Below, one piece after another: positions 4,543 through 60,689 of a DNA stretch of 64,000 bases. Positions within the stretch are counted from its first letter, which is position 1; the number at the start of each line of letters is the position of its first letter. The notes beneath the pieces are model-generated. The model was given only the letters and a program-made list of their open reading frames with translations, was not told where the DNA came from and ran no database searches. The DNA comes from Macrostomum lignano (taxonomy: Eukaryota). A program made the translations under genes and the position numbers. The stretch covers positions 62,001-126,000 of the forward strand of contig NIVC01000584.1 of NCBI GenBank assembly GCA_002269645.1. Reading direction: 5' to 3'.

Positions 4543-9533
<4,991 letters not shown>

Positions 9534-12592: not shown

Positions 12593-13445
12593 AGGTGCGC
12601 CCTTTTGGCGCCCTAGCTGACACTAAATGTGGTGCCCTAGCTGACACTAAATGTGGTGCCCTAGCTGACACTAAATGTGGCGCCCTAGCTGACACTAAAT
12701 GTGGCGCCCTAGCTGACACTAAATGTGGTGCCCTAGCTGACACTAAATGTGGTGCCCTAGCTGACACTAAATGTGGCGCCCTAGCTGACACTAAATGTGG
12801 CGCCCTAGCTGACACTAAATGTGGTGCCCTAGCTGACACTAAATGTGGCGCCCTAGCTGACACTAAATGTGGTGCCCTAGCTGACACTAAATGTGGTGCC
12901 CTAGCCGACACTAAATGTGGCGCCCTAGCTGACACTAAATGTGGTGCCCTAGCTGACACTAAATGTGGCGCCCTAGCTGACACTAAATGTGGTGCCCTAG
13001 CTGACACTAAATGTGGCGCCCTAGCTGACACTAAATGTGGCGCCCTAGCTGACACTAAATGTGGCGCCCTAGCTGACACTAAATGTGGTGCCCTAGCTGA
13101 CACTAAATGTGGCGCCCTAGCCGACACTAAATGTGGCGCCCTAGCTGACACTAAATGTGGCGCCCTGGCTGACACTAAATGTGGTGCCCTAGCTGACACT
13201 AAATGTGGTGTCCTAGCTGACACTAAATTTAGCACCCTAGCTGACACAGAGTCATGGCGCCCTAGTTGACACTAAATGAGGTTTCTTAGCTGACTCTAAA
13301 CATGGTGCCCTAGCTGACACTAAAGTGGCGCCCTAGCTGACACTAAAGTGGCGCCCTAGCTGACACTGAAGTGGCGCCCTAGCTGACACTAACTCAAAAT
13401 GTGGCGCCCTAGCTGACACCAAATGTGGCGCCTCAGCTGACACCG
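12593..13445. repeat. 24-bp minisatellite (GTGGYGCCCTAGCTGACACTAAAT), ~35 copies
   Basis: Direct reading. Confidence 0.95.
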
Positions 13446-13668: not shown

Positions 13669-14693
<1,025 letters not shown>

Positions 14694-18469: not shown

Positions 18470-20118
18470 AAAGATCTCACTTTGGGATCCCCCATGATTG
18501 TAGATTTTACTCTGGGGATCCCCCGTGATTGCAGATCTCACTGTGAGGATCCGCCGTGATTGCAGATCTCACTGTGAGGATCCGCCGTGATTGCAGATCT
18601 CACTGTGAGGATCCGCCGTGATTGCAGATCTCACTATGAGGATCCCCCCGTGATTGCAGATCTCACTGTGAGGATCCGCCGTGATTGCAGATCTCACTAT
18701 GAGGATCCGCCGTGATTGCAGATCTCACTGTGAGGATCCCCCCGTGATTGCAGATCTCACTTCGAGGATCCACGATTGCAAATCTCACTTCGAGGATCCA
18801 CGATTGCAAATCTCACTTCGAGGATCCACGATTGCAAATCTCACTTCGAGGATCCACCACGATTGCAGATCTTACTTTGGGGATCCCCCCGTGATTGCAG
18901 ATCTTACTTAAAGAATCCCCCCATGATTGCAGATCTCACTGTGAGGATCCCCCCGTGATTGCAGATCTCACTATGAGGATCCCCCCGTGATTGCAGATCT
19001 CACTGTGAGGATCCCCCGTGATTGCAGATCTCACTGTGAGGATCCCCCGTGATTGCAGATCTCACTGTGAGGATCCCCCGTGATTGCAGATCTCACTGTG
19101 AGGATCCCCCGTGATTGCAGATCTCACTATGAGGATCCCCCCGTGATTGCAGATCTCACTTCGAGGATCCACGATTGCAAATCTCACTTCGAGGATCCAC
19201 GATTGCAAATCTCACTTCGAGGATCCACGATTGCAAATCTCACTTCGAGGATCCACCACGATTGCAGATCTTACTTTGGGGATCCCCCGTGATTGCAGAT
19301 CTCACTTCGAGGATCCACGATTGCAAATCTCACTTCGAGGATCCACCACGATTGCAGATCTTACTTTGGGGATCCCCCGTGATTGCAGATCTCACTTCGA
19401 GGATCCCCCCATGATTGCAGATCTCACTGTGAGGATCCCCCATGATTGCAGATCTCACTGTGAGGATCCCCCATGATTGCAGATCTCACTGTGAGGATCC
19501 CCCATGGTTGCAGATCTCACTGTGAGGACCCCCCATGATTGCAGATCTCACTGTGAGGATCCCCCATGATTGCAGATCTCACTGTGAGGATCCCCCCATG
19601 ATTGCAGGTGTCACTTCGAGGATCCACCACGATTGCAGATCTCACTGTGAGGATCCCCCATGATTGCAGATCTCACTGTGAGGATCCCCCATGGTTGCAG
19701 ATCTCACTGTGAGGACCCCCCATGATTGCAGATCTCACTGTGAGGACCCCCCATGGTTGCAGATCTCACTGTGAGGATCCCTCATGGTTGCAGATCTCAC
19801 TGTGAGGATCCCCCATGATTGCAGATCTCACTGTGAGGATCCCCCATGATTGCAGATCTCACTGTGAGGATCCCCCATGATTGCAGATCTCACTGTGAGG
19901 ATCCCCCATGATTGCAGATCTCACTGTGAGGATCCCCCCATGATTGCAGATCTCACTGTGAGGATCCCCCATGATTGCAGATCTCACTGTGAGGATCCCC
20001 CATGATTGCAGATCTCACTGTGAGGATCCCCCCATGATTGCAGATCTCACTGTGAGGATCCCCCCCATGATTGCAGGTGTCACTTCGAGGATCCACCACG
20101 ATTGCAGATCTCACTTTG
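18470..20118. repeat. ~26-33-bp quasi-palindromic minisatellite (GATTGCAGATCTCACTGTGAGGATCCCCC[C]AT)
   Basis: Direct reading; BglII and BamHI sites in most units. Confidence 0.95.
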
Positions 20119-20649
20119 ATGATTCCCAATGATATCTGAGTCCACAAACTAAACTGATATTTTTGATAATGCAATTGCAAAAATCTAATTTCAAAATAAA
20201 GCAGCCAGCTCATCAAGATATTTATCGATATTTATTCGATCATTTCGCAACAGCAATTGATAATTGAATAAGCAGTTGTTAATGCGTTGGCGGTTCTGTA
20301 TTTGCCTGGTTAAAGACATTCAATTGCAGTTCAACAGAGCCTGGACATTGTGATTAAACGCGGGTGCATATTAATGAAAAATAAAACAGTCCATGCTAAC
20401 TGATGGGTGATTGACAAAGCAAATATACGCTCGTATTGATACTCAAATAGTTTACAAAAATAAAAATGCAAAGTCTGCCACGAACAGAAAATATTCAATA
20501 AAACACAAGTCAATGTACATTGAACAGCGGCACAAGGGATTGCAGACGCGCAAACAGGAGGGCACAGAGCGGCTTTTAATAACAGTTCAACAACTCGTTG
20601 CCCCGGGTTCGAATACTGGTCCGCGCTTGCGAACTGCGACTGAGCGGAG

Positions 20650-21093: not shown

Positions 21094-24000
21094 TCAGGCG
21101 GTGCCGGAGGCGGGCGGCGGAGCGCCGTCTCCCGGCCGGTTCTTCTGCAGCGGCGCCTTCAAAGCCCAGCTTGGCGCAGCCTCGGGCGGCGGCCGCTGCG
21201 ACCGCGATCGGACGGGGTCGCGGATGCACCTGGCCAGCTGCTGCTTCTGCTTGGTGGTGGCGCAGTTGTCCGCGTAAACCTGGTCCAGCTGCCGCTTCAG
21301 CCGCTTCACCTCGTCGGACTCCCAGGACAGCTCGCGGACCCGCAGCTGGTCGGCGCCGCCGGAGCCGCACTCCTCATCCGAGCTGGTGTACTCCCTGGTG
21401 AGGATCACGCGGAACTTCTCCAGCTCGTCGGAGGTCAGGCTGGTGGCCACGAGTTCGAAACTTTTCTGACGGCGGTTCAGCTTCTGCAAGTTCGGGGGAA
21501 GCGAGGCAAGACTGCGAGAGCTGGCTGCTTTGAGATTCATTTCAGTCATAGCCTTCATACAGTGGCTTTTCAGTCATAGCTCAGGTCATAGAGTGGTGGC
21601 TTTTCAGTCATAGCTCAGATCTCATACAGCGGCTGTTCAGTCATAGCTCAGGTCATGCAGTGGCTTTTCAGTCATAGATCAGGTCATGCAGTGGCTTTTC
21701 AGTCATAGATCAGGTCATGCAGTGGCTTTTCAGTCATAGCTCAGGTCATGCAGTGGCTTTTCGACAGCTCAGTACAGTTTAAACAGAAGCAAATCAGAGA
21801 GGAATCATTTTTCATATCATGATGGCATTGACTACTGATCAGCAGTCAGTACAGTAGTTCCAATAGCATGTAACAAATATTTTCATATCGCAGCCTGAAA
21901 GCTCTGAAATCGAGTTTTGAACCCGGACCAACATCTGAACGAAATCTGTTGCGCATCTTCTTTCTAAAGTCGGCGAATATGCAGATCAATCGGCTGTTCA
22001 TGGGCAGCTCTGCAACGCGCGCGATGGGTAACTGTTTGCTGGCAATTCTGTGTGCTGTACAATTCACAGTCTGAGTTGTCAGGAAACGTCTGGCATTGTA
22101 ACAGGCTGAGCGATAAGTTACAGCGGGTAAAGGTTGCTGGCCCGGGGCCCACAGTGCCAGCAATGTACAGCCTCACACCCCCCCCACGGTGCACCGCGCA
22201 ATTACGTTGGTCTGCTAGCGTATCTGTGTCTGTCTGTTTGCCTATCTTAGTGTTTGTTTGCCTGCCGGCCTGTCTGTCAATCAATCAATTTGTCTGTCTA
22301 CCAATCTAGCTACCCTGCCTACCCCGCCAAGGCAGAGCAATCAAAAATGGGGAAAAGCAAACAACACAGATGAGGCGAAAAGCCACCCAGCTGCACTGAC
22401 ATCAGAGCGGGACTTGAATCGCCTTTTCTTTTTAAAGTCGCCAAAAATGGCGAGCAGGCGGGCCTTGGGCGGCAGATCTGCAAGCGGCAGTCGGTGGCGT
22501 GACGGACACGGGGGGTTCGCACAATTGCAGCACCCGGCCATTGTCGGGAAACGTCTCAGCACTGAAGCGGAATTCGCAGAGCCCCATAGAAACACCTAAA
22601 GCAATTATCACTAACATCCATCCGAAACCTGGTGCGCATTTTCTTTCTAAAATCGTTGAATATGGCGGTCGGCCGGCCGGTGTGCGGCAGCCCTGCAACA
22701 GCGGGGCAGTCAGGTCAAGTGTTAGCAAGCACAAGCCTCACACAGCAGTGAGCTTACAGGCAGCCGGGAAACGTCAAAAAATTAAATAAAAACCTAAACA
22801 GAGAAAATCGGGCACGCACGCCAAGCACCAGCCTAGCGCGCATCTTCTGCCTAAAATCGGTGAACATCTTCCTGATTTTGCCGCTGGAAGGCAGATCTAA
22901 AAATAGATGTAAAAAGTGAGCCGAGCACTCCTCAATACACTACTGACTGGCGTGAGTAGACGATAGCGACTTTGGTAGAAATTTGCTACGCAAAGCCAAA
23001 TCTGCTCAACTTTAGTCAGGAAACGCCGATATGCATCGTAGAAAATTTTTGACAGAAAAAATTCCCAACACAACAGAGAAAGTGCGGAACTGTGACAATT
23101 GCGTACAACGAGTCGCAGCTTGTTTCGGATTTGACTTCTGAAAACAAAGAAAATCTCGGACAGGCGGCCGACTTTCGGCAGTCCTGCGGGAAAATCGCCT
23201 CAGACTCTGGGTGCACTTATAGGTGTGAGTGTTTTAGCCAACTGTCCAGACGGGAAACGTCGAATTGATTGTAAAATTGTAGACTTATTTATCACTGACT
23301 TGCTTAACCCAGCGCAAAGACAGGCGGACATCAAAGGCTCAGGGGGAGGGAGGCGGCTTATCAAAGGCTCAGGGGGAGAGGCGGCTCATCAAAGGCTCAG
23401 GGGGAGGGAGGCGGCTTATCAAAGGCACAACACAAGGGGAGAGGCGGCTCATCAAAGGCACAGGAGAGGCGGCTCATCAAAGGCTCAGGGGGAGAGGCGG
23501 CTCATCAAAGGCTCAGGGGGAGGGAGGCGGCTGATCAAAGGCACAGGGGGAGAGGCGACTGATCAAAGGCACAGGGGGAGAGGCGGCTCATCAAAGGCTC
23601 AGGGGGAGAGGCGGCTCATCAAAGGCTCAGGGGGAGGGAGGCGGCTGATCAAAGGCACAGGGGGAGAGGCGGCTGATCAAAGGCACAGGGGGAGAGGCGG
23701 CTCATCAAAGGCTCAGGGGGAGGGAGGCGGCTCATCAAAGGCACAAGGGGAGAGGCGGCTTATCAAAGGCTCAGGGGGAGGGAGGCGGCTTATCAAAGGC
23801 ACAGAAGGAGAGGCGGCTTATCAAAGGCTCAGGGGAGAGGCGGCTCATCAAAGGCTCAGGGGAAGGGAGGCCGCTCATCAAAGGCACAGGGGCAGAGGCA
23901 GCTGATCAAGGTACAGGGGAGGGCACAGGGGGAGGGAACTCACAATCTGCCTGTGCTTGGCGCGCAGACGGGCTCCATAGGTGCAGTGAATCCGATTCAC

Positions 24001-26661
24001 TCTGGACTCTTTGGGCAGCCCTGGGCAAATTGGAGGCCAGAAACATATTGGCAAAACTGTTTTGAGCAAAGCCTGTTATAAAGACGCGAGTCTGGGCGAA
24101 CATCGCAAGCAGGACAGTGGAGGCTGGTGTGACACAAAAAACCGATAGAAACAGAGCTGACCAGCAAAGCTTACAACGCATCGATGCTTAAACCTCATCT
24201 TTTGCCGAAAATCCAGGTACAGGTAGACTAGCCTTGAGCCGTAGGGCAGTTCTAAGTGTGAGTTGAGCAGTTCAGCTTTATTCAAAACTCATTCTAAATG
24301 GCCAATAAGAAACGTCGAATAGGCAACAGTCTCAGTAGCATTACATCGCTTTACCACCTGCTAACTGTAGGCAGTTCGGCAATAGAAATAATGCAAATAA
24401 TTAATTAGATAATTAATGCATAATTAAGTCTCTGATTGTGTCTCAAATAGTCAGACATGAACCTATTAGAAGCAGCCCAAGTTGAAAGGAGATTAAAATT
24501 AGTTATTAAATATTTCTTGTACCCAAATTACTTGCGACGTTTCCAGACTTGAGGGCAGGTAAAATTAGCACATTAGCGCAGCCTATAGATACTACTTGGC
24601 TAGTCTGTGCGAGTAGTATTAATAGAATATAACTAAGATAAGATTTTACGATTAATCTATTCTATTAACTACTTCATACGCAGTGTAATCTTAATTAAGA
24701 GTTGTATTCTACACATCATTTATCAACTTATCAAACTTTATATCTAAATGCACAAAAAGCGGCACTGATTCTCACTCAGCCAAATGTCCTCGGGCCAGCC
24801 CTTGCCCTGGGCCATCTCCTTGGCTTTGGCGGTGACGCGGGTGGCAACTCGCTGGTTGTGCTCCGAAGAGAAGCTGTGGGGCCGGCGGTGGGGGAGGCGG
24901 CGCTCTTGAGTCCACAGAGATCAGGGCTGGCTCAGGGTTGAGTTCAAGGGGTGGCTCAGGGTTGAGTTCAGGGGCTGGCTCAGGGTTGAGATCAGGGGGT
25001 GGCTCAGAGTTGAGTTCAGGGGGTGGCTCAGGGTTGAGTTCAGGGGCTGGCTCAGGGTTGAGATCAGGGGGTGGCTCAGAGTTGAGTTCAGGGGGTGGCT
25101 CAGAGTTGAGTTCAGGGGTGGCTCAGAGTTGAGTTCAGGGGGTGGCTCAGGATTGAGCTCAGGGGGTGGCTCAGGGTTAAGTTCAGGGGGTGGCTCAGGG
25201 TTGAGTTCAGGGGCTGGCTCAGGGTTGAGATCAGGGGGTGGCTCAGAGTTGAGTTCAGGGGGTGGCTCAGAGTTGAGTTCAGGGGGTGGCTCAGAGTTGA
25301 GTTCAGGGGGTGGCTCAGGATTGAGCTCAGGGGGTGGCTCAGGGTTAAGTTCAGGGGGTGGCTCAGGGTTGAGTTCAAGGGGTGGCTCAGGGTTGAGTTC
25401 AGGGAATGGCTCAGACTTGAGTTCAGGGGTGGCTCAGGGTTTGTTCAGGGGTGGCTCAGGGTTTGTTCAGGGTAGCCTAACCAGGGTTTGCATTTTGGCT
25501 GATGTAAGGTCGAAGATTTCTAGAGGCGTTTCCAGACTGAGGCCGGGACTGGTAACCGGCGTGCCAGCTAAGGAGACTCACGGCAGGCTGAAGTCAAACA
25601 GATGCGGCCCGTTGCCCTTGAGAGCTTTGTAAGCCCGGCGCATGATGGTCTTGCACTCGGCCGGCATCGAGCTGTCGCCTGCGCCGCCGCCGACCCCGCC
25701 GAGTCGCGGCATTTTGGCGGGCGACGGGCCGACGCCACCGAAGGCGCCGATGCCGCTAGCGCCAAAGCTGCTGTCGTCGAAGTAGTCGGTGATGACGCAA
25801 TCGTCATCCTCGTCTTCATCATCGGCGTCCTCTTCCAAGATCTCCGGCGGCTCCAGCTGTTCGCCGAAGTTTGCGTTAGCGGCGGATGGCAGGGCGGAAG
25901 CGCCGGCCGCGTCAAAGTTCTCCATCTGTTGAGCACCAGAAGAGAAGAGAATGACGGCGACATCAAAGAGACGGGAAAGGCGGCGACATCAAAGGAGTGG
26001 GGAAAGGCGGCGACATCAAAGGAGTGGGGAAAGGCGGCGACATCAAAGGAGTGGGGAAAGTCGGCGACATCAGAGGAGATGGGAAAGGCGGCGACATCAG
26101 AGGAGATGGGAAAGTCGGCGACATCAGAGGAGATGGGAAAGGCGGCGACATCAGAGGAGATGGGAAAGGCGGCGACATCAGAGGAGATGGGAAAGTCCGC
26201 GACATCAAATATAATAGGAAAGGCGCCGACATCACAACGCGGTGAATAGGAAATACCTTGATGGTGCCAAGGGCGGAGCGCAGCACTGAGGTGCACTGCT
26301 GCTCCGTGTCGGTGTCGCCTAGCAGTTTCTCCTCCTTAGCGAAGCGTCTGCTAGAAGCGGCAGCAGCCGACGAGGATGAAGTGGCTTCGGCAGCCTCGGC
26401 AGCGGAGCCGTGGCTTTGATCCAGGCCGGCGGCCTCCAGCTCGGCGAGGTGGTCGCTGCGCTCACACAGGCGGCCGTAGCGCGGCTCCATGACCTGGACA
26501 ACGTGGCTGTGCAGGCCGCCGATGATGCGCAGGGCGGAGAACAGCTCCCGCTCGGCCATGGACTCCACCAGCATCTGCGCGTTGGTGATGGTGGACTCGA
26601 ACAGGGTCAGGGGTGAAAAAACGCCCCCGGTGATGGAGTGGCTAGGCAGAATGTCCGTCAT
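21094..26661 (-). CDS. C14orf93/DUF4616-like protein, paralogue A, ~437 aa; complement(join(26257-26661,25582-25925,24776-24873,23944-24020,21094-21483))
   Basis: Exons join in frame at GT-AG sites and align with paralogue B: FSPLTLFE.TITNAQML, AYK.LKGNGPHLFDF, F...NQRV, RRQKSFEL, YTSSDEE, RVREL.WES, P.WAL. The 77-nt exon 4 is least certain. The family name is recalled motif similarity. Confidence 0.75.
21540..21770. repeat. 31-bp minisatellite (CAGTCATAGCTCAGGTCATGCAGTGGCTTTT)
   Basis: Direct reading. Confidence 0.85.
23325..23935. repeat. 27-31-bp minisatellite (GGCGGCTCATCAAAGGCTCAGGGGGAGA), paralogue A intron 4
   Basis: Direct reading. Confidence 0.9.
24922..25468. repeat. 24-bp minisatellite (GGTGGCTCAGGGTTGAGTTCAGGG), paralogue A intron 2
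   Basis: Direct reading. Confidence 0.93.
25960..26235. repeat. 27-bp minisatellite (GGAAAGGCGGCGACATCAGAGGAGATG), paralogue A intron 1
   Basis: Direct reading; 9-aa periodicity in the ORF track. Confidence 0.85.
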
Positions 26662-26729
26662 TGTTTGGTGGTGAAAGGCTACATGCAAAAGCGTAATTGC
26701 AGACTTGACTCATTGCGCTAGAAGGGAAT

Positions 26730-27145
26730 CCCAGACATTTAATGTACGCAGTGGGTTAGGCAGTGAGGGGTGGGTGCTGGAGAGGAATTCCAGACATTCA
26801 ATGTACGCAGTGGGGTAGGCAGTGAGGGGTGGGTGCTGGAGAGGAATTCCAGACATTCAATGTACGCAGTGGGGTAGGCAGTGAGGGGTGGGTGCTGGAG
26901 AGGAATTCCAGACATTCAATGTACGCAGTGGGTAGGCAGTGAGGGGTGGGTGCTTGAGGGGGATCTCAGACACTCAATGTACGCAGTGGGGTAGGCAGTG
27001 AGGGGTGGGTGCTGGAGGGGAATCTCAGGCCCTCAATGTACGCAGTGGGGTAAGCAGTGAGGGGTGGGTGCTGGAGGGGAATCCCAGACATTCAATGTAC
27101 GCTGTGGGGTAGGCAGTCAGGGGGATGGGTGCTGGAGGGGAATCC
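26730..27145. repeat. 59-bp tandem repeat x7
   Basis: AGACATTCAATGTACGCAGTGGGGTAGGCAGTGAGGGGTGGGTGCTGGAGAGGAATTCC units. Confidence 0.9.
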
Positions 27146-27734
27146 CAGGAACTAAACATGCACTATGCACTACACTATGCTATAATAATAAAGCCTGGTC
27201 TATTTCACTACATGAGCAAAGCTTCAGAACAGTAATACAACTGCATTTTTCCGATAATGAATCGGCAACAACAGAAAAAGAATGAAAAATTCTTTAGCAA
27301 ATAAATTTATTATTATCATATTGTTATGTAATTATCGTATTTTATAGCATGTACAGAACGAGACAGTGTGTTAACGCAAAAGCAAAGCTGCGGAAATGAC
27401 TGGGGGCAGTTAAACAACAGCAAAAAATAATAAACACATGAAAACAGAATACAGGCAAACTTATTACAGATTAACAAGTGAACAGAGACATGTGACAATG
27501 TGGGGTTTATGAAAGTTCGCTAATTGCAATAATATTTACTGACTGGGATAGCAGCAACAAGTAAAATATTATAGATAAGAGACGAATTGCGCAACTACTC
27601 GCAGTGCAAATATTGAAGCTTAAATGCAGCAAATACTTTTCCCCAGGTATTGAAATCGCATGGAGCCTCTGTGCCAGCATTGGAGAGCTATTCAAATTTT
27701 GATTCGAAAAGTCAACATTGACAGCATGACGAAC

Positions 27735-28565
27735 TCGATGGGAGAGACCAGGTGTGCCGGGTTCCCCATGGATGGGAGAGACCAGGTGTGCCGGGTACCC
27801 CATGGATGGGAGAGACCATGGATGGGAGAGACCAGGTGTGCCGGGTACCCCATGGATGGGAGAGACCAGGTGTGCCGGGTTCCCCATGGATGGGAGAGAC
27901 CAGGTGTGCCGGGTACCCCATGGATGGGGGAGACCAGGTGTGGCGGTATCCCATGGATGGGGGAGACCAGGTGTGCCGGGTACCCCATGGATGGGAGAGA
28001 CCAGGTGTGCCGGGTTCCCCATGGATGGGAGAGACCAGGTGTGCCGGGTACCCCATGGATGGGGGAGACCAGGTGTGGCGGTATCCCATGGATGGGGGAG
28101 ACCAGGTGTGCCGGGTACCCCATGGATGGGGGAGACCAGGTGTGGCGGTATCCCATGGATGGGGGAGACCAGGTGTGGCGGTATCCCATGGATGGGGGAG
28201 ACCAGGTGTGGCGGTATCCCATGGATGGGGGAGACCAGGTGTGGCGGTATCCCATGGATGGGAGAGACCAGGTGTGCCGGGTACCCCATGGATGGGAGAG
28301 ACCAGGTGTGCCGGGTACCCCATGGATGGGAGAGACCAGGTGTGCCGGGTTCCCCATGGATGGGAGAGACCAGGTGTGCCGGGTATCCCATGGATGGGAG
28401 AGACCAGGTGTGGCGGTATCCCATGGATGGGGGAGACCAGGTGTGGCGGGTATCCCATGGATGGGGGAGACCAGGTGTGGCGGTATCCCATGGATGGGGG
28501 AGACCAGGTGTGGCGGTATCCCATGGATGGGAGAGACCAGGTGTGGCGGGTATCCCATGGATGGA
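27735..28565. repeat. 33-34-bp minisatellite (CCATGGATGGGAGAGACCAGGTGTGCCGGGTACC)
   Basis: Direct reading. Confidence 0.95.
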
Positions 28566-28712
28566 AGAGAACACGAACAAAACTGGGTGTCAGAAACAAT
28601 TGCAATAAAGAATGGTTGGCCCTAAATTCGTCACAGTTAGTTGGGTAAACGGCGCGAGTAACCCTATAGTTCGCGAATCAACCAGCTCGCCACCTAATCA
28701 GTCTGGCAAGCA

Positions 28713-31700
28713 TTAGCGGTACTCATTAGACAGCGCCCAGGACGGGCAGTTGGCAGGTGGAGTCCTGCCGCTGACGCAGCCGGAGTCGCGCACTGTGCTG
28801 CGCAACTGCTGCGCCTGCTTCTGAGTTGCGCAATTCTCCAGATAGATCGAGTCCAGCTGCTGCTTCATCTCGCGCAGCTCCGCAGATTCCCAGGGCAGCT
28901 CGCGGACTCGAAGGACGCCTCCGCCGCCTCCTCCGTCATCGCCGCTCGCGCTGGCGCCGCCGCTGCCAACATCGGCTTCCTCATCAGACGAAGTGTAGTC
29001 CCGGGACAAAATGATGCGGTACTTGTCGAACTTGTCGGTGGATAAACTGGTTGCTAGCAGTTCGAAGCTCTTCTGCCGTCTGGCCAGTTTCTGATGGGTC
29101 AGAAAACAGGAGCTGCATGTGGCGTGTGGGACACGGAGAGGGAGATGGAGAGGTAGGTCGGGAGAGGGAGATGGAGAGGGAGGTCGGGAGGGGGAGATGA
29201 AGGTAGATTGAAAAGAGGAGATGGAGAGGGAGGTTTGGAGGGGGAGATAGAGAGGGAGGTTTGGAGGGGGAGATAGAGAGGGAGGTTTGGAGGGGGAGAT
29301 AGAAAGGGAGGTTGGGAGGGGGAGATAGAGAGGGAGGCTGGGAGGGGGAGATGGAGGTTGGAAAGGGGAGATGGAGAGCGGGAGGCAGCGAGGTGTAATA
29401 TCACGCAGCCCATTCAATTTTAAAGATGAGGCATCATGTCAGTCGTATAAATGAGAGCAGAAAAGTCCCTGATTAGCACCTACTTCCTAAAAGCCTATAT
29501 GCGTCTTACCGACCCAATTGGTTAATTCACAACAAAGGATAAAACCCGGTGGAAAAAGTAAGCAAATGAGCATAGACTGCATGGTTTTACTTTATTTTTC
29601 AGGCGCCCCTTGCGCTGATAGAAGACGTCTCTTTCGCGCTTGTGCGCCACAGCTTTCTTCAATAGCAGCCACAATTCCTCAGCGCAGCCTGCAATGCAGC
29701 GCACGGCGCAGGTGTTACTGCCGGGCGGTCCTGAAACACTGGATTCAATCTCTAACGGAGCTGGCTAAACTGGGACGGCCGGGCCTTGCTTTTGATGCTG
29801 CGTGAAATTTGTTACCATCGTTACCGGGTTGCTATGCACCTCCAACAGGCATGCAACCTATCAATTTATCAGAATAAATTTAATAGGGATTAGTCAGTAG
29901 AGATTAATTTGAAATTAGTAGGGCTAGGACTTTTGACTGCGGGATTATGATTTCCGACTGTGTGATTGGGACTTCTGACTGCGGGATTGTGATTTCCGAC
30001 TGTGTGATTGTGACTTCTGACTGTGGGATTGTGACTTCTGACTATGGGATTGTGACTTCTGACTATGGGCTTGGGATTTGACTGTGGGATTGGGACTTCT
30101 AACTGCGGGATTAGGACTTCTGACTGTGAGATTGGGACTTCTGACTGTGGGATTGGGACTTCCCACTGTGAGATTGGGACTTCTGACTGTGGGATTGTGA
30201 CTTACGACTGTGAGATTGTGACTTCTGACTGTGGGATTGGGACTTCTGAGTGCGGGATTGGGATTTGTGACTGCGAGATTGAGACTTCTGACTGTGGGAT
30301 TGGGACTTCTGAGTGCGGGATTGGGATTTCTGACTGCGAGATTGAGACTTCTGACAGTGGGATTGTTACTTTTGACTGTGGGATTGTGACTTACGACTGT
30401 GAGATTGTGACTTCTGACTGTGGGATTGTGACTTCTGACTATGGGATTGTGACTTCTGACTATGGGATTGGGACTTCTGACTGCGGGATTGGGACTTCTG
30501 ACTATGGGATTGGGACTTGACAGTGGGATTCGAACGGATTCGACTGTCAGACCAGATCTTGGCTATTAAAGCTTGCTCTTTTAATAGCCCAGAACAAACA
30601 CGGGACTGAACACACCGGACTGCAGAAGCAAAAGCTAATATCAAAGACCCAATCCGGACCAGGGCAGTGTTTACCTTGAGTTTGCTGCGGAATTTCCGCA
30701 CAGAATGCTTAGTATAGTGCCGCTTCTCCAATATGCTGTGCTGCAGATCAGCAAACGCAGCACTGGACAGGCCTGAAACAGTTTAAAAAGAAATCCCCAA
30801 CCCCAAAGAGGATTAAGATTGCGCTAAGAAACCATGGGAAGTGTTAGCCGCGGACCTTGCGTTTGATGCGCGATTAGGCAGTGATTTATGAAACAAGCAG
30901 GCTTGCACTGCAAATAGTTATAGTTATTTATAATACGTACGCTGTTCATAAGCCTGCGAGCTCGCATTCTGTGCTTCATTCGCTCCCTATGCTTGTCATA
31001 TTTGGTTAACTCATCGTACACGCTGGGGAAGCAGTGCTCTGCAATAAGGTCAGTAAGCGGTCCAATCCAGTGTGCTATTATTGCATAGATACTGCCTAGC
31101 TGCACTCTAGTCGATATGGGCCAACTCTTTGCCACCGAATCGCTACGAATTTTTATAAAAGCGTATAACAACGATTAACAGGATGAACAATGGGCGAATG
31201 GGCCAGGGACCACTGGAGCTTATCTGGACTGGACACTGGGATCTTTGAGTGTCGTCATGAATACCTTTTGAATATATACCCAATTTGACTAACCCCCCCC
31301 CATGCTCGCCCCAGTCCAGTCCAGCGGGAACTCCAGACGCCCATGGCAACAGCTGATTAAGCAACTATTAGAAGCGACAAAACTGCAACTCAGAAAAACA
31401 AGATGGGAAGGGAAGGCAGATGCGACTCCTTACAGACTTCTGCCCGGCAACGCGGCGCATTCGGACTCGAGTGAGCACGCGATTTTTCTCCTCGGCATAA
31501 AATGCTCGAGCAGCTTTATTGTCTGCAAGGCGAGTGGCATGCCTTTCTATGTTTACGGGTTAACACTTGGTTACAGGTTAACAGCGCTGGCACAGCAAGT
31601 CAGTTTATTTGCCTGTCCCCCTAGTTATAACCATGACCTAACAGAGTTTGCAGACACACGCAGCTCAGTGAGCACACAGTCTCAAATAAACCTACGTTGC

Positions 31701-34700
31701 TTTTCCGTTTAATTTTAAGCATTCGAAATTTGGCTAAGTAATTGTGCCTCGCCTGACCGAACACGCCGCTGCTGTTGAGCGATTCTAAAAACACATTTGA
31801 TTGGCTCTGCGGCATGACTGTCGGAGCTGAGCAAGCAACTGCCCGAGACTTCACCGCTTCACCGCAGTTTGATCCGCTTCACTTCATAAGGGCATTGAGA
31901 ACTTTCCCCGATTGTTATCACTGCCACAATAAACTAAGCTAAGAAGACAAGACTCAATGGCTGCTCATTAGGGGATGTGGGAGGCTGGCTGCTCATTAGG
32001 GGGTGTGGGAGGCTGGCTCATTATGGAGTGTGGGAGGCTAGCTGCTCATTAGGGGGTGTGGGAGGCTGACTGCTCATTAGGGGGTGTGGGAGGCTGGCTG
32101 CTCATTAGGGGGTGTGGGAGGCTGGCTGCTCATTAGGGGGTGTGGGAGGCTGGCTCATTATGGAGTGTGGGAGGCTGGCTGCTCATTAGGGGGTGTGGGA
32201 GGCTGACTGCTCATTAAGGGATGTGGGAGGCTGGCTGCTCATTAGGGGGTGTGGGAGGCTGGCTGCTCATTAGGGGGTGTGGGAGGCTGGCTCATTATGG
32301 AGTGTGGGAGGCTGGCTGCTCATTAGGGGGTGTGGGAGGCTGGCTGCTCATTAGGGGGTGTGGGAGGCTGGCTCATTAGGGGGTGTGGGAGGCTGGCTGC
32401 TCATTAGGGAGTGTGGGAGGCTGGCTGGTCATTAGGGGGTGTGGGAGGCTGGCTGCTCATTAGGGGGTGTGGGAGGCTGGCTCATTAGGGGGTGTGGGAG
32501 GCTGGCTGCTCATTAGGGGGTGTGGGAGGCTGGATCATTAGGGGGTGTGGGAGGCTGGCTGCTCATTAGGGGGTGTGGGAGGCTGGATCATTAGGGAGTG
32601 TGGGAGGCTGGCTGCTCATTAAGGGATGTGAGAGGCTGGATCATTAGGGAGTGTGGGAGGCTGGCTGCTCATTATGGGGTGTTGGAGGCTGGCTGCTCAT
32701 TAAGGGATGTGGGAGGCTGGCTCATTAGGGGATATGGTAGGCTGGCTGCTTATTAGGGGGTGAGGGAGACTGGCTCATTAGGGGATGTGGGAGACTGGTT
32801 CATTAGGGATGTGGGAGGATGGCTGCTCATTAGGGGGTGAGGTAGACTGGCTCATTAAGGATGTGGGAGGCTGGCTCATTAGGGGATGTGGGAGGCTGGC
32901 TGCTCAGCATTGCAGCTGGTAGGGATTCGCTAGCTAGGTAGCCAATAGAATAATCAGTTGGAGAACAACCTTCTGCCTGCAGCGAAACTGCCGATTGCGC
33001 CGCTTGTTATTGTTCAGCTCGATTTTGATTCGCTTACACAGGTTGCCGGCTTGGCCTAAACAAAGTTTCAGTTGAACGGCAGCACGCAGCTGATCAGCAA
33101 TAAAAGTACAACTAATTGCACAGCTTGTATCAATAATCAGCACGCGACCCTGCAGTCGGTTTAAATTAACCAATAAAAGCTGCACCTCAGGGAGTGGAAA
33201 GCAAAATCAACAAACTGAAATGCATACTGTACTGCTAACAGTTAAGAAGAGCATAGATAATTAGTTAATTATGAATTCATAGAGGCGGAATCAATTAATG
33301 ACGGGACAGTTGCGCTGCCGTCCCATGGGAAACGAACGAGCTACTAGCCATACTCAGGTAAGATATGAAAACTCTTATTGTAGCTGGCAATCAAACTGGA
33401 TCACGGTGCGAAGTCACCAAATGCAAGGAGAGGGCCGACATCAATATTCACTTAATACATTTGCTAATGCTATTACTTTAAACTGGTTGCGAGTAGTCAC
33501 TTATGCATTTGTTTAAATTATTAAATAACCAACTCACTCCACCAGACATCGTTAGGCAGGCGCAGGTGGCTCAGCTGCTGGCGGGCCGTAGCGATAATCT
33601 GCTCGGATACTCTCTGATTGGACGGGTCGTGGAAGCTGCGGCGGCGTTGCGATTGGTTGGTGAAATTGTAATGAAATGTAATGCGATTGGTTGGGTTCTT
33701 GCACTGCCTCACCACCCCACTGAATCCCTCACTGTGCTGCTCATACCCCACTGAATCCCTCACTGTGCTGCTCATACCCCACTGAATCCCTCACTGTGCT
33801 GCTCATACCCCACTGAATCCCTCACTGTGCTGCTCATACCCCACTGAATTCCTCATTGTGCTGCTCATACCCCACTGAATCCCTCACTGTGCTGCTCAGA
33901 CCCCTGAATCCCTCACTGTGTTGCTCATACCCCACTGAATCCCTCATTGTGCTGCTCATACCCCACTGAATCCCTCACTGTGCTGCTCATATCCCACTGA
34001 ATCCTTCACTGTGCTGCTCATATCCCACTGAATCCCTCATTGTGCTGCTCAGACCCCAATGGATCCCTCACTGTGCCGCTCATACCCCACCGAATCCCTC
34101 ACCCGCTCATACCCACCGAATCCCTCACCCGCTCATACCCCACTGAATCCCTCACCCGCTTATACGCCACTGAATCCTTCACCCGCTCATACCCCACTGA
34201 ATCCCTCACCCGCTTATACGCCACTGAATCCTTCACCCGCTCATACCCCACTGAATCCCTCACCCGCTCATACCCCACTGAATCCCTCACACGCTCATAC
34301 CCCACTGAATCCCTCACCCGCGCATACCCCACCGAATCCCTCTACAAGGGATGCAAGAATTGCAGAGCAACTCACGACAGCGCAAAGTCAAACAGGTGCG
34401 GCCCGTTGCCTTTAATATTTTTATAGGCCATCCTGAGCGCATTTTTGCACTCGGCCAGTTGCTGGGCGCTGCCAGGAAAACCCGCGCTGGCTCCGCCCGG
34501 CATCTGCAGACTTGACGAGGGCGACAACGGGCGGTGGCGCTTTCGGCTGGCGGAGCTGGAGGCCGACGGCGACATTGCGGCAGCAGCGGCGGGGAAGGAG
34601 CAGTCCTCCTCCAGGATCAGACAGTCCTCTTCGTCTTCCTCGGGGAACGCGTCGGGGTCCAGCAGCTCGGACTTGACGCCGCCAGCTGCCACAGAGCCGG

Positions 34701-35097
34701 TAGACTCGGACTTCAGGCCGGCCGCGGCGGCGGCGGCAGCTACGGCAGATTTCAAATCGGCGCCGCTGCCATTGGCTCCGAAACTGGCCGAGTTGGCGGC
34801 GCCAGCTGACTTGGAAGGAGTCAGCGTTGCTGATGTTGCAGCCGCGGCAGCCGCCTGGCAGCAGGCTTCGTGCTCGTCGCTACGCTGACAGACGCGATCG
34901 TAGCGCGGCTCGATGACGCCGACAATGTGGGTGTGGAGGCCGCCGGCGATCTTCAGGGCCTGCATCAGGTCCCGGTCGGCCATGGAGTCGATGAGCATCT
35001 GTGCGTTGGTGATGGTGCACTCGAACAGGGTCAGCGGCGAGAAGGCCGGATTGTTGGCTCCGCCTTGCGATGATGGCATTAGCAGGTCGCAGGCCAT
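28713..35097 (-). CDS. C14orf93/DUF4616-like protein, paralogue B, ~427 aa; complement(join(34376-35097,33538-33635,32970-33055,28713-29090))
   Basis: Same conserved blocks as paralogue A, an identically sized 98-nt exon, and the same intron phases (2,1,0) at equivalent positions. Acceptors CCGCAG, TTTAG, CATCAG. Confidence 0.78.
29130..29385. repeat. Purine-rich tandem repeat (GGAGATAGAGAGGGAGGTTTGGAGG)
   Basis: Direct reading. Confidence 0.8.
29930..30530. repeat. 21-bp minisatellite (GGGATTGTGACTTCTGACTGT)
   Basis: Direct reading. Confidence 0.92.
31968..32905. repeat. 24/28-bp minisatellite (GGGAGGCTGGCTGCTCATTAGGGGGTGT)
   Basis: Direct reading. Confidence 0.93.
33715..34340. repeat. 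31-bp then 27-bp minisatellite (CCCCACTGAATCCCTCAC core), paralogue B intron 1
   Basis: Direct reading. Confidence 0.92.
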
Positions 35098-47588: not shown

Positions 47589-47624
<36 letters not shown>

Positions 47625-60404: not shown

Positions 60405-60689
60405 TGTCCGTCTGTCTGCCTGTGTGTCTGTCTGTCTGTCTGCCTGTGTGTCTGTCTGTCTGTCTGCCTGTCTGTCTGTCTGCCTGTCTGTCTGCCCGTC
60501 TGTCTGCCTGTCTGTGTGTCTGTCTGTCTGTCTGCCCATCTGTTTGTCTGTCTGTCTGCCTGTCTGTCTGCCCGTCTGTCTGTCTGTCTGTCTGCCTGTC
60601 TGTCTGCCCGTCTGTCTGTCTGTCTGTCTGTCTGCCTGTCTGTCTGCCTGTCTGTCTGCCCGTCTGTCTGTCCGTCTGTCCGTCTGTCT

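What the first reader, a model, noticed from the sequence alone, without database searches (positions are those of the whole stretch)
21094..35097. Unannotated tandem gene pair of a C14orf93/DUF4616-like family
Two old paralogues are hidden by short exons and minisatellite introns. They share FDF..F....NQRV, a basic RR..RRQK segment, YTSSDEE, RVREL.WES..L...LD and S.R.PP...P.WAL. This layout recalls the C-terminal domain of human C14orf93 and many uncharacterised invertebrate proteins. Basic helices plus an acidic motif suggest a nuclear DNA or chromatin factor. Origin as a domesticated transposon accessory gene is a hypothesis only: no TIRs or transposase flank them here.
Basis: partly seen in the sequence, partly recalled or inferred. 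Interest (0 to 1): 0.7.

Follow-up and report, generated by a model that had tools for sequence, protein, structure and literature searches.

The report
Flatworm gene pair with exon-choice switch
Two neighbouring flatworm (Macrostomum lignano) genes encode distant relatives of the poorly understood human protein C14orf93, and each carries an array of interchangeable mini-exons whose choice appears to be set by RNA base-pairing of the kind known from the insect gene Dscam.

Summary
Window 21094-35097 (minus strand) holds two old paralogous genes of Macrostomum lignano: B at 35097-28713 and A at 26661-21094. Both have short exons and minisatellite-filled introns.

They are not truly unannotated. 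GenBank has hypothetical-protein models, mostly truncated. One full-length model of B exists on a near-identical contig.

The C14orf93/DUF4616 idea holds only as remote homology. Pfam PF15394 never hits. The C-terminal 220-residue domain does match uncharacterised proteins of hemichordates, an echinoderm, amphioxus, a mollusc and a nemertean (HMMER E down to 1e-19). That wider family matches true C14orf93 profile-to-profile (96%, P 2.5e-9; reversed and shuffled controls fail). dN/dS is 0.07-0.38.

No evidence supports a transposon origin.

The exon for the middle of a long basic helix exists as seven 77-nt variants in A and up to six 89/98-nt variants in B. In A, one docking site 223 nt after the constitutive exon is complementary to a selector 57-117 nt upstream of every variant. 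Paralogues at other loci keep this layout, some with different complementary sequences. This is a Dscam-exon-6-type mutually exclusive splicing switch, inferred without RNA-seq. The protein's function remains unknown; it is probably nuclear.

The parts
26257..26661 (-). Gene A exon 1 (coding part; ATG at 26661). Encodes the Macrostomum-specific N-terminal helical domain FSPLTLFESTITNAQML...
   Evidence: Donor is AAG|gtattt.
25582..25925 (-). Gene A exon 2. Encodes the acidic DDDCVITD motif and ECKTIMRRAYKALKGNGPHLFDFSL. Ends in phase 2.
   Evidence: Acceptor caacag|ATG, donor CC|gtgagt.
24776..24873 (-). Gene A exon 3. Constitutive 98-nt 'NQRV' exon. Ends in phase 1.
24530..24552 (-). Gene A docking site, RNA sense UCAAGUCUGGAAACGUCGCAAGU, 223 nt downstream of the exon 3 donor.
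   Evidence: Its core CTGGAAACGTCGCAAGT holds the only 11-mers shared by the variable regions of all three A-type paralogues.
24309..24317 (-). Selector for variant a1 (CGACGUUUC), 57 nt upstream of the acceptor. Weakest of the seven.
24175..24251 (-). Gene A variant exon a1, 77 nt: K LPYGSRLVYLYLDFRQKMRFKHRCV.
   Evidence: Orthologous to L001 variant 6 and L002 variant 4.
24089..24109 (-). Selector for a2 (CUUGCGAUGUUCGCCCAGACU), 68 nt upstream. Strongest duplex with the docking site (-30.5 kcal/mol, z -4.7).
23944..24020 (-). Gene A variant exon a2, 77 nt: R LPKESRVNRIHCTYGARLRAKHRQI.
   Evidence: Used in models P0009 and P0251. Orthologous to L001 variant 7 and L002 variant 5.
23253..23264 (-). 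Selector for a3 (UUCGACGUUUCC), 69 nt upstream.
23107..23183 (-). Gene A variant exon a3, 77 nt: R LPKVGRLSEIFFVFRSQIRNKLRLV.
23014..23028 (-). Selector for a4 (CGGCGUUUCCUGACU), 117 nt upstream.
22820..22896 (-). Gene A variant exon a4, 77 nt: N LPSSGKIRKMFTDFRQKMRARLVLG.
   Evidence: Used in model P0010.
22762..22778 (-). Selector for a5 (UUUGACGUUUCCCGGCU), 69 nt upstream.
22616..22692 (-). Gene A variant exon a5, 77 nt: R LPHTGRPTAIFNDFRKKMRTRFRMD.
   Evidence: Present in models P0009, P0010 and P0251.
22543..22557 (-). Selector for a6 (GAGACGUUUCCCGAC), 65 nt upstream.
22401..22477 (-). Gene A variant exon a6, 77 nt: N LPPKARLLAIFGDFKKKRRFKSRSD.
22078..22093 (-). Selector for a7 (CCAGACGUUUCCUGAC), 68 nt upstream.
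21933..22009 (-). Gene A variant exon a7, 77 nt: K LPMNSRLICIFADFRKKMRNRFRSD.
21094..21483 (-). Gene A last exon (phase 0, stop codon at 21096-21094): KLNRRQKSFEL...YTSSDEE...RVRELSWES...SQRPPPEAAPSWAL.
34376..35097 (-). Gene B exon 1 (ATG at 35097). Encodes the N-terminal domain, a low-complexity linker, the EEDCLILEED motif and ECKNALRMAYKNIKGNGPHLFDFAL.
33538..33635 (-). Gene B exon 2. Constitutive 98-nt 'NQRV' exon, same length and phases as in A.
33413..33427 (-). Gene B candidate docking site CUUGCAUUUGGUGAC, 110 nt downstream of the exon 2 donor.
   Evidence: Identical 15-mer at the same relative position (101 nt) in the B-type paralogue on L001. Complementary to the b5 and b6 selectors.
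32967..33055 (-). Gene B variant b1, 89 nt: S QAGNLCKRIKIELNNNKRRNRQFRCRQKV.
   Evidence: Used, with read-through, in P0001. No clear selector.
31696..31784 (-). Gene B candidate variant b2, 89 nt: K SLNSSGVFGQARHNYLAKFRMLKIKRKSN.
   Evidence: Shares AKFRM with L002_B candidate 6325-6407. Candidate only.
31434..31522 (-). Gene B candidate variant b3, 89 nt: N NKAARAFYAEEKNRVLTRVRMRRVAGQKS.
   Evidence: Resembles L001_B candidate 11978-12063. Candidate only.
30941..31038 (-). Gene B candidate variant b4, 98 nt: K HCFPSVYDELTKYDKHRERMKHRMRARRLMNS.
   Evidence: Candidate only.
30855..30868 (-). Selector for b5 (CAUCAAACGCAAGG), 82 nt upstream. 13 of 14 positions pair with the B docking site.
   Evidence: In the top 0.09% of positions in the 4.3-kb variable region.
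30675..30772 (-). Gene B variant b5, 98 nt: S LSSAAFADLQHSILEKRHYTKHSVRKFRSKLK.
   Evidence: Used in model P0247.
29784..29797 (-). Selector for b6 (CAUCAAAAGCAAGG), 95 nt upstream. 13 of 14 positions pair.
29591..29688 (-). Gene B variant b6, 98 nt: S CAEELWLLLKKAVAHKRERDVFYQRKGRLKNK.
   Evidence: Used in the full-length GenBank model P0246, PAA55553.
28713..29090 (-). Gene B last exon (stop codon at 28715-28713): KLARRQKSFELL...YTSSDEE...RVRELPWES...SGRTPPANCPSWAL.
23322..23909 (.). A 28-bp minisatellite inside the A variant cluster, between a2 and the a3 selector. Other minisatellites: 25955-26234 (27 bp, A intron 1), 24917-25472 (24 bp, A intron 2), 21540-21762 (31 bp), 33714-34342 (31 bp, B intron 1), 31958-32906 (28 bp), 29927-30530 (21 bp), 29135-29356 (26 bp). 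Intergenic: 26717-27148 and 27816-28570.

Best explanation
**What it is.** Window 21094-35097 holds two tandem, same-strand, protein-coding paralogues. They belong to a gene family that has expanded in the flatworm Macrostomum lignano.

**Protein layout.** Each protein (about 430 aa) has four parts:
- a family-specific N-terminal helical hairpin
- a disordered low-complexity linker that ends in an acidic D-D-D-C-hydrophobic motif
- a confidently folding C-terminal domain of about 220 residues
- within that domain, a long basic helix

The C-terminal domain is a divergent member of a bilaterian family. The vertebrate branch of that family is C14orf93/RTFC (Pfam DUF4616).

**Variable exon.** The middle 26-33 residues of the long basic helix (residues 281-333 in the model of paralogue P0002) come from one exon drawn from an array of tandemly duplicated variants. 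Gene A has seven variants of exactly 77 nt. Gene B has two to six variants of 89 or 98 nt. Each length is 2 mod 3 between a phase-1 donor and a phase-0 acceptor, so joining two or three variants breaks the frame.

**How the choice is made (inferred).** Choice follows the Dscam-exon-6 scheme. One docking sequence lies in the intron just after the constitutive exon. [quoted passage not shown] Pairing loops out the variants in between and presents the chosen variant to the upstream donor.

**Shown here:** the genes, the paralogy, purifying selection, the remote homology, the exon arrays, and the complementary elements with their conservation.

**Inferred:** that the pairing forms and drives exclusive choice; that the protein is nuclear; and that swapping the helix segment changes partner or nucleic-acid specificity.
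For: **Genes and splicing**
- Searches give collinear blocks, canonical splice sites, identical phases and open isoforms.
- Organism and existing models.
- Selection: dN/dS is 0.07-0.38 in 13 comparisons among six genes.

**Homology**
- 426 hits at E<=1e-3. Named ones come from Glandiceps, Ptychodera, Patiria, Branchiostoma, Potamilus and Lineus.
- hhalign to true C14orf93 orthologues gives 96.2%, P 2.5e-9, 178 columns.
- Reversed profiles and 20 shuffled profiles score 17.1 or less.
- The link holds without the flatworm rows.

**Structure**
- The C-terminal domain has pLDDT 90-98, and the variable segment sits inside a long helix.

**Exon arrays**
- Seven 77-nt AG..GT units are homologous to one another. 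DNA similarity is confined to the exon.
- 10 or more and 5 such exons occur in the A-type paralogues on L001 and L002.
- Individual variants are orthologous and collinear across paralogues.
- Different variants are used by different database models: a2, a4, a5, b1, b5, b6, L001 variant 7 and L002 variant 3.

**RNA elements**
- GGGAAACGTC with one mismatch or fewer occurs only 5 times in 64 kb. These are four selectors and, on the other strand, the docking site.
- All seven variants have a selector 57-117 nt upstream.
- The docking 17-mer is the only sequence shared by three variable regions at dS above 1.
- In L001, 11 of the 13 strongest duplex peaks lie upstream of variants.
- The B-type and P0006-type genes use different docking and selector sequences in the same layout. 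In L005, 6 of 7 peaks fall one per variant.
Against: **Splicing**
- No RNA-seq or cDNA was available, so neither exclusivity nor use of a1, a3, a6, a7 or b2-b4 is shown.
- Three UniProt models (P0009, P0010, P0251) join two A variants. One of them stays in frame through a donor 4 nt downstream. Multiple inclusion or sloppy splicing is therefore possible.
- Selectors for b1-b4 were not found, and the a1 selector is short (9 nt).
- Tandem duplication copies upstream intron sequence along with the exon, so similarity among selectors alone is not proof of function.

**Homology**
- The Pfam PF15394 model does not hit any member.
- A Macrostomum-only profile does not reach C14orf93.
- Foldseek found no solved structure like the model, so nothing constrains biochemical function.

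**Selection**
- dS is near saturation and only conserved segments were used, so dN/dS is biased low.
Confidence: 0.75

Rival explanations
1. The repeated mini-exons are leftovers of tandem duplication, or ordinary cassette or cryptic exons. One variant is used constitutively and the rest are silent or feed nonsense-mediated decay. On this view the docking and selector complementarity does not control choice.
For: - No transcript data were examined.
- Models P0009, P0251 and P0010 join two variants.
- Selectors would be copied together with the exons in any duplication.
- b1-b4 lack selectors.
Against: - All 7 variants here, plus 10 and 5 at the other loci, keep exact length, frame, both splice sites and an open frame, although synonymous sites are saturated between loci.
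- Individual variants are conserved as orthologues across paralogues.
- The docking site is the single most conserved element of the region.
- Three paralogue groups keep complementarity with three different sequences.
- Different models use different variants.
Confidence: 0.13
2. The resemblance to C14orf93 is convergent, produced by basic and acidic low-complexity runs. On this view the family is an independent bilaterian family with no vertebrate member.
For: - PF15394 gives no hit at E<=10 for any of 40 or more members.
- The Macrostomum-only profile fails.
- Identity in the hhalign match is 15%.
Against: - The hhalign match spans 178 collinear columns at P 1e-9 to 2.5e-9.
- Composition-preserving column shuffles and reversed profiles give P of 0.15 or higher.
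- The motif order is the same in both: N...YF..R, then the basic run, then SS/SD-EE, then R..L...LD, then S.R.P.
Confidence: 0.1
3. The genes are domesticated or still mobile accessory genes of a transposon.
For: - The family is multi-copy in M. lignano.
- Many short homologous fragments occur in metagenomic and read-assembly sources.
Against: - The window has no transposase-like ORF; ORFs of 130 aa or more are repeats or ordinary exons.
- Neighbours at six loci are a TRC8-like ligase, an ion channel, a syntaxin, ribosomal L21e, a methyltransferase and a kinase.
- The genes have multiple exons, and intron positions are shared between flatworm and nemertean.
- Purifying selection acts on them.
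Confidence: 0.04

Closest known systems
C14orf93 / RTFC / mouse 4931414P19Rik (Pfam PF15394, DUF4616)
   Same: - The C-terminal region of about 180 residues aligns profile-to-profile.
- Motif order is the same: N of NQRV matches SWNISV; YF.S.RD matches YFLTKRREYR; the basic run matches KKLRSRRYRLF; SSDEE matches MSDEEDS; RVR.L.WES..L..K..LD matches WVARPPRFRAQRLTELCYHLD; S.R.P matches SDRLPS.
- The basic stretch that is variable here corresponds to one of the two predicted bipartite nuclear localisation signals of the mouse protein, which localises to the nucleus (PMC10163356).
- In both families the biochemical function is unknown.
   Different: - The Pfam model gives no hit.
- The N-terminal domains are unrelated.
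- The vertebrate protein is reported to be secreted as well, through an N-terminal signal peptide. No such sequence is evident here, and this was not tested.
- Alternative exon arrays in C14orf93 were not looked for.
Dscam1 exon 6 cluster of insects (docking site and selector sequences; Graveley 2005, as summarised in PMC6071210)
   Same: - A single docking site lies in the intron downstream of the constitutive exon.
- One selector, complementary to the docking site, lies upstream of every variant.
- The docking site is the most conserved element of the cluster.
- Variants have equal length and arose by tandem duplication.
   Different: - The gene is unrelated (nuclear-type protein versus Ig-superfamily receptor) and the phylum is different.
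- There are 5 to 10 or more variants, not 48.
- The variant encodes part of a basic helix, not half an Ig domain.
- Paralogous genes in one genome use different docking and selector sequences.
- No experimental support exists, and no known repressor plays the role of hrp36.
Other arthropod clusters with competing RNA structures (14-3-3zeta, Mhc, MRP1, Dscam exons 4 and 9) and mammalian two-exon cases (ATE1)
   Same: Tandem homologous exons are chosen through competing intronic base-pairings (PMC6071210, PMC7797038).
   Different: In those insect genes the docking site lies downstream of the cluster (PMC6071210). Here it lies upstream, as in Dscam exon 6. No downstream docking site was found.
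Uncharacterised invertebrate homologues, for example LOC144453630 (Glandiceps talaboti), LOC119721312 (Patiria miniata), Hypp8856 (Branchiostoma lanceolatum) and LOC135489509 (Lineus longissimus)
   Same: - They share the same C-terminal domain (HMMER E 1e-10 to 1e-19; hhalign 100%, P 1.8e-38).
- They usually have an N-terminal coiled coil.
- The Lineus gene has introns at the same two positions that bound the variable exon.
   Different: - They lack the Macrostomum N-terminal FSPLTLFE domain.
- tblastn found no duplicated variant exon in the one Lineus locus examined.

Membership tests
C14orf93 / DUF4616 (Pfam PF15394) | Match to the Pfam PF15394 model at or near its gathering score | tested here: not met
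   No PF15394 hit in four tests: the exon pieces at E<=1, six full-length paralogues at E<=10, ten invertebrate homologues at E<=0.01, and 28 domain sequences at E<=10.
C14orf93 / DUF4616 (Pfam PF15394) | Profile-to-profile similarity to verified C14orf93 orthologues, all of which carry PF15394 | tested here: met
   - hhalign gives 96.2%, P 2.5e-9 over 178 columns.
- Reversed and shuffled controls give P of 0.15 or higher.
- The link holds at 96.4% without the flatworm rows, and flatworm to invertebrate profile gives 100%, P 1.8e-38.
- Caveat: a flatworm-only profile versus C14orf93 is not significant. The link is therefore transitive.
C14orf93 / DUF4616 (Pfam PF15394) | The N-terminal region of C14orf93 (MSFSATILFSPP..., Cys-rich, predicted signal peptide) | tested here: not met
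   hhalign of the two N-terminal profiles gives P 0.26.
C14orf93 / DUF4616 (Pfam PF15394) | Same three-dimensional fold | not testable with these tools
   No AlphaFold DB library was available. The PDB has no relative by sequence or by fold.
Mutually exclusive exon cluster (criteria of Pillmann et al. 2011, as cited in PMC6071210: equal length, conserved splice sites and frame, sequence homology) | Tandem exons of equal length with conserved splice sites and reading frame, homologous to one another | tested here: met
   - Gene A has 7 units of exactly 77 nt. All are AG|..|GT in the same frame, with consensus .LP...R...IF..FR.K.R.K.R...
- Gene B lengths are 89, 89, 89, 98, 98 and 98 nt. Homology among them is weaker. 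Only b1, b5 and b6 are backed by gene models.
Mutually exclusive exon cluster | Exactly one variant per mature mRNA | not testable with these tools
   - No RNA-seq was available.
- Frame arithmetic (77 is 2 mod 3) forbids 2 or 3 variants.
- Complete models P0246, P0002, P0003, P0005, P0006 and P0007 carry one variant each.
- P0009, P0251 and P0010 carry two.
Docking-site and selector control (Dscam exon 6 type) | One docking site next to the constitutive exon that is the most conserved intronic element | tested here: met
   CTGGAAACGTCGCAAGT holds the only 11-mers shared by the 3.3-5 kb variable regions of three A-type genes. It lies 223, 442 and 74 nt after the donor in the three genes.
Docking-site and selector control (Dscam exon 6 type) | A selector complementary to the docking site upstream of each variant | tested here: met
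   - Gene A: 7 of 7 variants, 57-117 nt upstream.
- L001: 9 of 10. L002: 4 of 5.
- L005: 6 of 6.
- Gene B: only 2 of 6, so inconclusive for B.
Docking-site and selector control (Dscam exon 6 type) | Complementarity kept through sequence change (covariation) | tested here: met
   Three paralogue groups use different pairs in the same layout:
- A-type: GGAAACGUCGCAAG with CUUGCGACGUUUCC
- B-type: CCUUGCAUUUGGUG with CAUCAAA(C/A)GCAAGG
- P0006-type: UUUGCAGAGGUU with AACCUCUGCRAA

This is system-level covariation, not a per-base-pair statistical test.
Docking-site and selector control (Dscam exon 6 type) | Disrupting and restoring the pairing changes variant choice | not testable with these tools
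   This needs minigene or transgenic experiments.
Transposon-borne or domesticated accessory gene | Linked transposase, terminal repeats or mobile-element context | tested here: not met
   Searches (window; five other loci) show only ordinary neighbours. Intron positions are shared with Lineus.

The most novel reading that the evidence does not exclude
A whole flatworm gene family has independently evolved, and kept for a long time, Dscam-exon-6-style docking and selector RNA switches. Different paralogues use different 'codes'.

If so, these would be the first multi-variant docking/selector clusters that I could find described outside arthropods. They would offer a natural covariation series in an animal that can be made transgenic.

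The diversified part is a basic helix of a probably nuclear C14orf93-like protein. That would suggest isoform-specific partner or nucleic-acid recognition, a kind of molecular diversity so far linked with cell-surface receptors.
Probability: 0.55. Interest if true: 0.75.

Novelty: new member of a known kind. Interest (0 to 1): 0.6.

Why it matters
**For the protein family**
- C14orf93/RTFC is a vertebrate protein with disease associations, and the one paper read here (PMC10163356) found no domain that indicates its molecular function.
- This work ties it to a bilaterian-wide family of uncharacterised proteins that current Pfam models do not connect.
- It defines a confidently folding domain of about 220 residues and its invariant motifs.

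**For splicing**
- Docking and selector control of large exon arrays is, in the literature I could search, described essentially only for arthropod genes.
- Here the same architecture appears in a flatworm, in several paralogues, with at least three different complementary sequence pairs.
- That is the pattern expected if the RNA pairing, rather than the sequence, is under selection.
- M. lignano is, to my knowledge, amenable to transgenesis and RNAi (not checked here).

**For annotation**
- The arrays explain why almost all database models of these genes are truncated or mis-joined.

Tried and rejected
**Steps that led nowhere**
- Pfam on single exon translations and on full-length paralogues gave nothing meaningful.
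- A sequence search of the PDB with the family profile gave nothing.
- Foldseek of the model against the PDB gave a best E of 1.4. The viral library was not searched because it is not relevant.
- The word-indexed search with the 28-sequence domain profile returned only 6 proteins and no named vertebrate relative.
- A short HMM of the variable segment, built from the wider family, could not recognise even the clear A variants. Support for the variants therefore rests on their mutual similarity, on orthology across paralogues and on gene models.
- RNAduplex with a long docking window and 160-nt targets did not discriminate from shuffles. It was replaced by a sliding 30-nt scan with the whole variable region as background.
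- Searches for the locus tags, and for flatworm or Macrostomum mutually exclusive exons, found no paper.
- Rfam and tRNA scans of the window found nothing.

**How C14orf93 sequences were obtained**
- I used a stretch of human C14orf93 recalled from memory, only as bait. It returned 54 database proteins named C14orf93, all carrying PF15394. Only those real sequences were used afterwards.

**Ideas tested and rejected**
- A Macrostomum-only profile against C14orf93 was not significant.
- The N-terminal domains of the two families are not related.
- No docking site was found downstream of the clusters.
- No selectors were found for b1-b4.
- UniRef names attached to family members (Rab-GAP TBC, Exocyst, Ras-GEF, BEN and others) were rejected as evidence. 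They differ between near-identical sequences, and no such Pfam domain is present.

Full report
**Origin and observation**

The window is genomic DNA of the free-living flatworm Macrostomum lignano. The best protein hit, P0001, is 99% identical to BOX15_Mlig028241g1 on a 274-kb contig of assembly GCA_002269645.1.

The region 21094-35097 carries two genes on the minus strand. A tblastn comparison of the two halves finds four collinear conserved blocks:
- an N-terminal block (69% identity, E 1e-26)
- the ECK..GPHLFDF block
- the 'NQRV' exon
- the last exon (52% identity, E 4e-34)

Splice sites are canonical and the phases are identical in both genes.

| Gene | Exon 1 | Exon 2 | Exon 3 | Variable exon | Last exon |
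|---|---|---|---|---|---|
| A | 26661-26257 | 25925-25582 | 24873-24776 | one variant | 21483-21094 |
| B | 35097-34376 | 33635-33538 | (none) | one variant | 29090-28713 |

In B, exon 1 covers what A splits into exons 1 and 2, so B's 'NQRV' exon is its exon 2.

Minisatellites with periods of 21-59 bp fill most introns and the intergenic spacer.

The genes are not unannotated. GenBank and UniProt hold about ten models of them, but nearly all are truncated or mis-joined. Only P0246 (PAA55553, from a near-identical contig) is a complete model of B.

**Family and selection**

The B-type then A-type tandem pair recurs at two other loci. On L001, P0002 is followed by the P0007 gene. On L002, P0003 is followed by P0005. 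A more distant pair, P0008 followed by a P0026-like gene, lies on L004.

About a dozen distinct 50%-identity clusters with the same architecture are named M. lignano. Every named protein that has the N-terminal FSPLTLFE(C/S)T.TNA.ML domain is from this species.

Nei-Gojobori estimates over about 220 conserved codons give the following:

| Comparison | dN | dS | dN/dS |
|---|---|---|---|
| A vs B in the window | 0.36 | 0.95 | 0.38 |
| Same-type genes at different loci | – | 1.0-1.9 | 0.07-0.16 |

The loci are therefore old paralogues under purifying selection. The ratios are biased low, because only conserved segments were used and dS is near saturation.

**Test of the C14orf93 / DUF4616 idea**

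Direct tests fail. PF15394 is not hit by the exon pieces, by six full-length paralogues, by ten invertebrate relatives or by 28 domain sequences, in most of these tests even at E<=10.

An exhaustive HMMER search with the family profile found 426 proteins at E<=1e-3. Outside Macrostomum the match covers only the C-terminal half. Named hits are uncharacterised proteins of two hemichordates, a sea star, amphioxus, a mussel and a nemertean.

To test the vertebrate link I fetched real C14orf93 orthologues. The bait was a remembered stretch of the human protein. All 54 returned proteins are named C14orf93 or RTFC and carry PF15394. I then aligned twelve of them, from mammals to hagfish.

Profile-to-profile comparisons gave these results:

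| Comparison | Result |
|---|---|
| 28-sequence invertebrate + flatworm domain vs C14orf93 | 96.2%, P 2.5e-9, 178 columns |
| Reversed profiles and 20 column shuffles | score <=17.1, P >=0.15 |
| Invertebrates without flatworm rows vs C14orf93 | 96.4%, P 1e-9 |
| Flatworm rows vs invertebrate profile | 100%, P 1.8e-38 |
| Flatworm-only profile vs C14orf93 | not significant, P 0.1 |
| N-terminal regions of the two families | P 0.26 |

AlphaFold2 with a 46-sequence alignment models that domain at pLDDT 90-98. The model has helices at 223-241, 257-273, 281-333, 336-345, 386-402 and 406-414, and two short strands. The N-terminal hairpin scores 77-89 and the linker is disordered. No solved structure resembles the model.

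Between the NQRV exon (phase-1 donor) and the last exon (phase-0 acceptor), gene A has seven units of exactly 77 nt. Each is bounded by AG and GT. All are open in the same frame and homologous to one another, with consensus .LP...R...IF..FR.K.R.K.R... DNA similarity stops at the exon borders.

Because 77 is 2 mod 3, one variant keeps the frame and two or three break it.

The A-type paralogues have at least 10 (L001) and 5 (L002) such 77-nt exons. Variants are reciprocal best matches across loci and lie in collinear order. For example, a1 matches L001 variant 6 and L002 variant 4, and a2 matches L001 variant 7 and L002 variant 5. These cross-locus matches are often closer than matches to neighbouring variants in the same gene. 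Individual variants are therefore conserved.

Gene B has six candidates of 89 or 98 nt. Three are backed by database models: b6 in the full-length model P0246, b5 in P0247, and b1 in P0001.

For A, models use a2 (P0009, P0251) and a4 plus a5 (P0010). The double inclusions are out of frame, or are rescued by a donor 4 nt downstream. This probably reflects annotation or splicing noise.

The P0006 and P0008 genes also have arrays at the same position, and different models use different variants (P0006 vs P0260; P0008 vs P0012).

In the wider family this segment aligns with the conserved A.K.YF.S.RD...R...G....HR...RR..R stretch. In the model it is the middle of the long helix 281-333. In the nemertean Lineus the homologous segment is bounded by introns at the same two positions, but tblastn found no duplicated copy of it.

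**Docking site and selectors**

A repeat search of the A variable region found one site, 24530-24552 (RNA UCAAGUCUGGAAACGUCGCAAGU). It lies 223 nt after the constitutive donor and is complementary to a motif repeated upstream of the variants.

- GGGAAACGTC with one mismatch or fewer occurs five times in the whole 64-kb window. Four are selectors on one strand and one is the docking site on the other strand.
- A sliding duplex scan places a selector upstream of all seven variants. The distances to the acceptor are 57, 68, 69, 117, 69, 65 and 68 nt.
- Among the eight strongest duplex peaks of that scan (the seven at z -2.5 or below, plus one at z -2.4), six are selectors. The weak a1 selector (z -1.5) is not among them.
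- The 17-mer CTGGAAACGTCGCAAGT holds the only 11-mers shared by the variable regions of the three A-type genes. It is more conserved than any exon there.
- In L001, 9 of 10 variants have selectors, and 11 of the 13 strongest peaks lie within 150 nt upstream of a variant. That upstream space is 34% of the region. In L002, 4 of 5 variants have selectors.

Gene B has a different candidate docking site, CUUGCAUUUGGUGAC at 33427-33413, 110 nt after the donor. The identical 15-mer sits at the same relative place in the B-type gene of L001. Selectors that pair at 13 of 14 positions lie 82 and 95 nt upstream of b5 and b6. None is convincing for b1-b4.

The P0006 gene uses a third pair: docking GCAUUUGCAGAGGUU, and selectors resembling CCUCUGCGAA that lie 56-91 nt upstream of each of its six variants. 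Six of the seven strongest peaks fall one per variant.

The layout is the same in all three groups while the complementary sequences differ. That is the pattern expected if the pairing itself is selected. The arrangement is that of the Dscam exon 6 cluster, and tandem duplication of an exon together with one arm of an intronic stem is a proposed origin (PMC6071210). I found no paper that describes such a system in flatworms.

**Function**

The biochemical function is unknown. My reading is inferred rather than tested: a nuclear protein that dimerises or docks through its N-terminal helical hairpin. The arguments are:
- The basic helix, whose middle is swapped by exon choice, corresponds in the alignment to one of two predicted bipartite nuclear localisation signals of the mouse orthologue.
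- The mouse protein is nuclear in transfected cells, and is also reported as secreted (PMC10163356).
- The invariant SSDEE cluster looks like a casein-kinase-2 site (my own knowledge, not tested).
- The invariant acidic D-D-D-C-(L/V/I)-I motif looks like a SUMO-interaction motif (my own knowledge, not tested).

Swapping 26-33 helix residues would then tune partner or nucleic-acid specificity.

**Transposon hypothesis**

Nothing supports it. The window has no transposase-like ORF. The neighbouring gene encodes a TRC8-type ubiquitin ligase. Neighbours at five other loci are ordinary genes. The exon structure is shared with a nemertean.

**Verdict**

The most interesting content is new: arrays of mutually exclusive exons with docking and selector elements. 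They are well supported by sequence and comparative evidence but unverified at the transcript level.

Noticed in passing
window 43953-58400 (+ strand): A multi-exon gene for a TRC8/RNF139-like membrane ubiquitin ligase. ORFs at 55087-55593 and 57948-58400 hit Pfam TRC8_N at E 1e-33 and 1e-48. It is an ordinary neighbour gene.
   Followed up: partly
whole window, for example 4770-5570, 7500-7990, 9665-11640, 12591-13270, 13669-14470, 19000-20133, 51600-52050, 60380-60830, 61527-63990: Minisatellite arrays are very dense all over the window. They create long spurious ORFs in several frames. The last 2.5 kb (61.5-64 kb) is one large array with 66% G+C and strong AT skew.
   Followed up: no
window 22816-22896 (variant a4 and the 4 nt after it): UniProt model P0010 joins a4 to a5 in frame by using a GT donor 4 nt downstream of the normal a4 donor (81 + 77 nt). 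It could be an annotation artefact or a real two-variant isoform.
   Followed up: partly
window 33413-33427 versus 24089-24109 and 24530-24552: The B-type docking site (CUUGCAUUUGG...) looks like an A-type selector (CUUGCGA(C/U)GUU...). The B selectors (..AAACGCAAGG) look like the A docking site (GGAAACGUCGCAAG). It is as if the two arms of one ancestral stem had swapped roles between the paralogues. The match is short and could be chance.
   Followed up: no
L005 11301-14402 (P0006 gene, NIVC01000420.1): A paralogue has six variant exons that share a C-terminal (R/K)(K/R)Y.R(V/I)(S/T)(A/S/T) motif. It has its own docking site at 11384-11397 and one selector per variant.
   Followed up: yes
L004 11402-25521 (P0008 gene, NIVC01000068.1): A 12.6-kb intron follows the used variant exon. 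At least three variants are seen, two of them used by different models (P0008, P0012). The rest of the intron was not searched thoroughly for further variants or a docking site.
   Followed up: partly
database records of the family: UniRef names given to near-identical family members are mutually inconsistent (Rab-GAP TBC, Exocyst Sec8/Exo70, Ras-GEF, FATC, Copine, BEN, WASH, ARID and others). No Pfam hit supports any of them. They look like naming artefacts.
   Followed up: partly
contigs holding PAA80363/80364, PAA55553/55554 and PAA80385/80386: The same B-A pair is annotated on three contigs (274, 144 and 161 kb) with nearly identical proteins. P0246 differs from the window's B by one residue. 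These are uncollapsed haplotypes or very recent duplicates of the locus.
   Followed up: no
window 17037-17759 (- strand): A 240-aa ORF with a hydrophobic segment and a Thr/Ser-rich mucin-like tail. It gives only weak Pfam hits. It may be an exon of another gene downstream of gene A.
   Followed up: no
L003 10001-14425 (Lineus longissimus OU342997.1): The nemertean homologue has introns at the same positions as the boundaries of the flatworm variable exon, but tblastn found no duplicated variant. The cassette exon therefore predates the arrays.
   Followed up: partly
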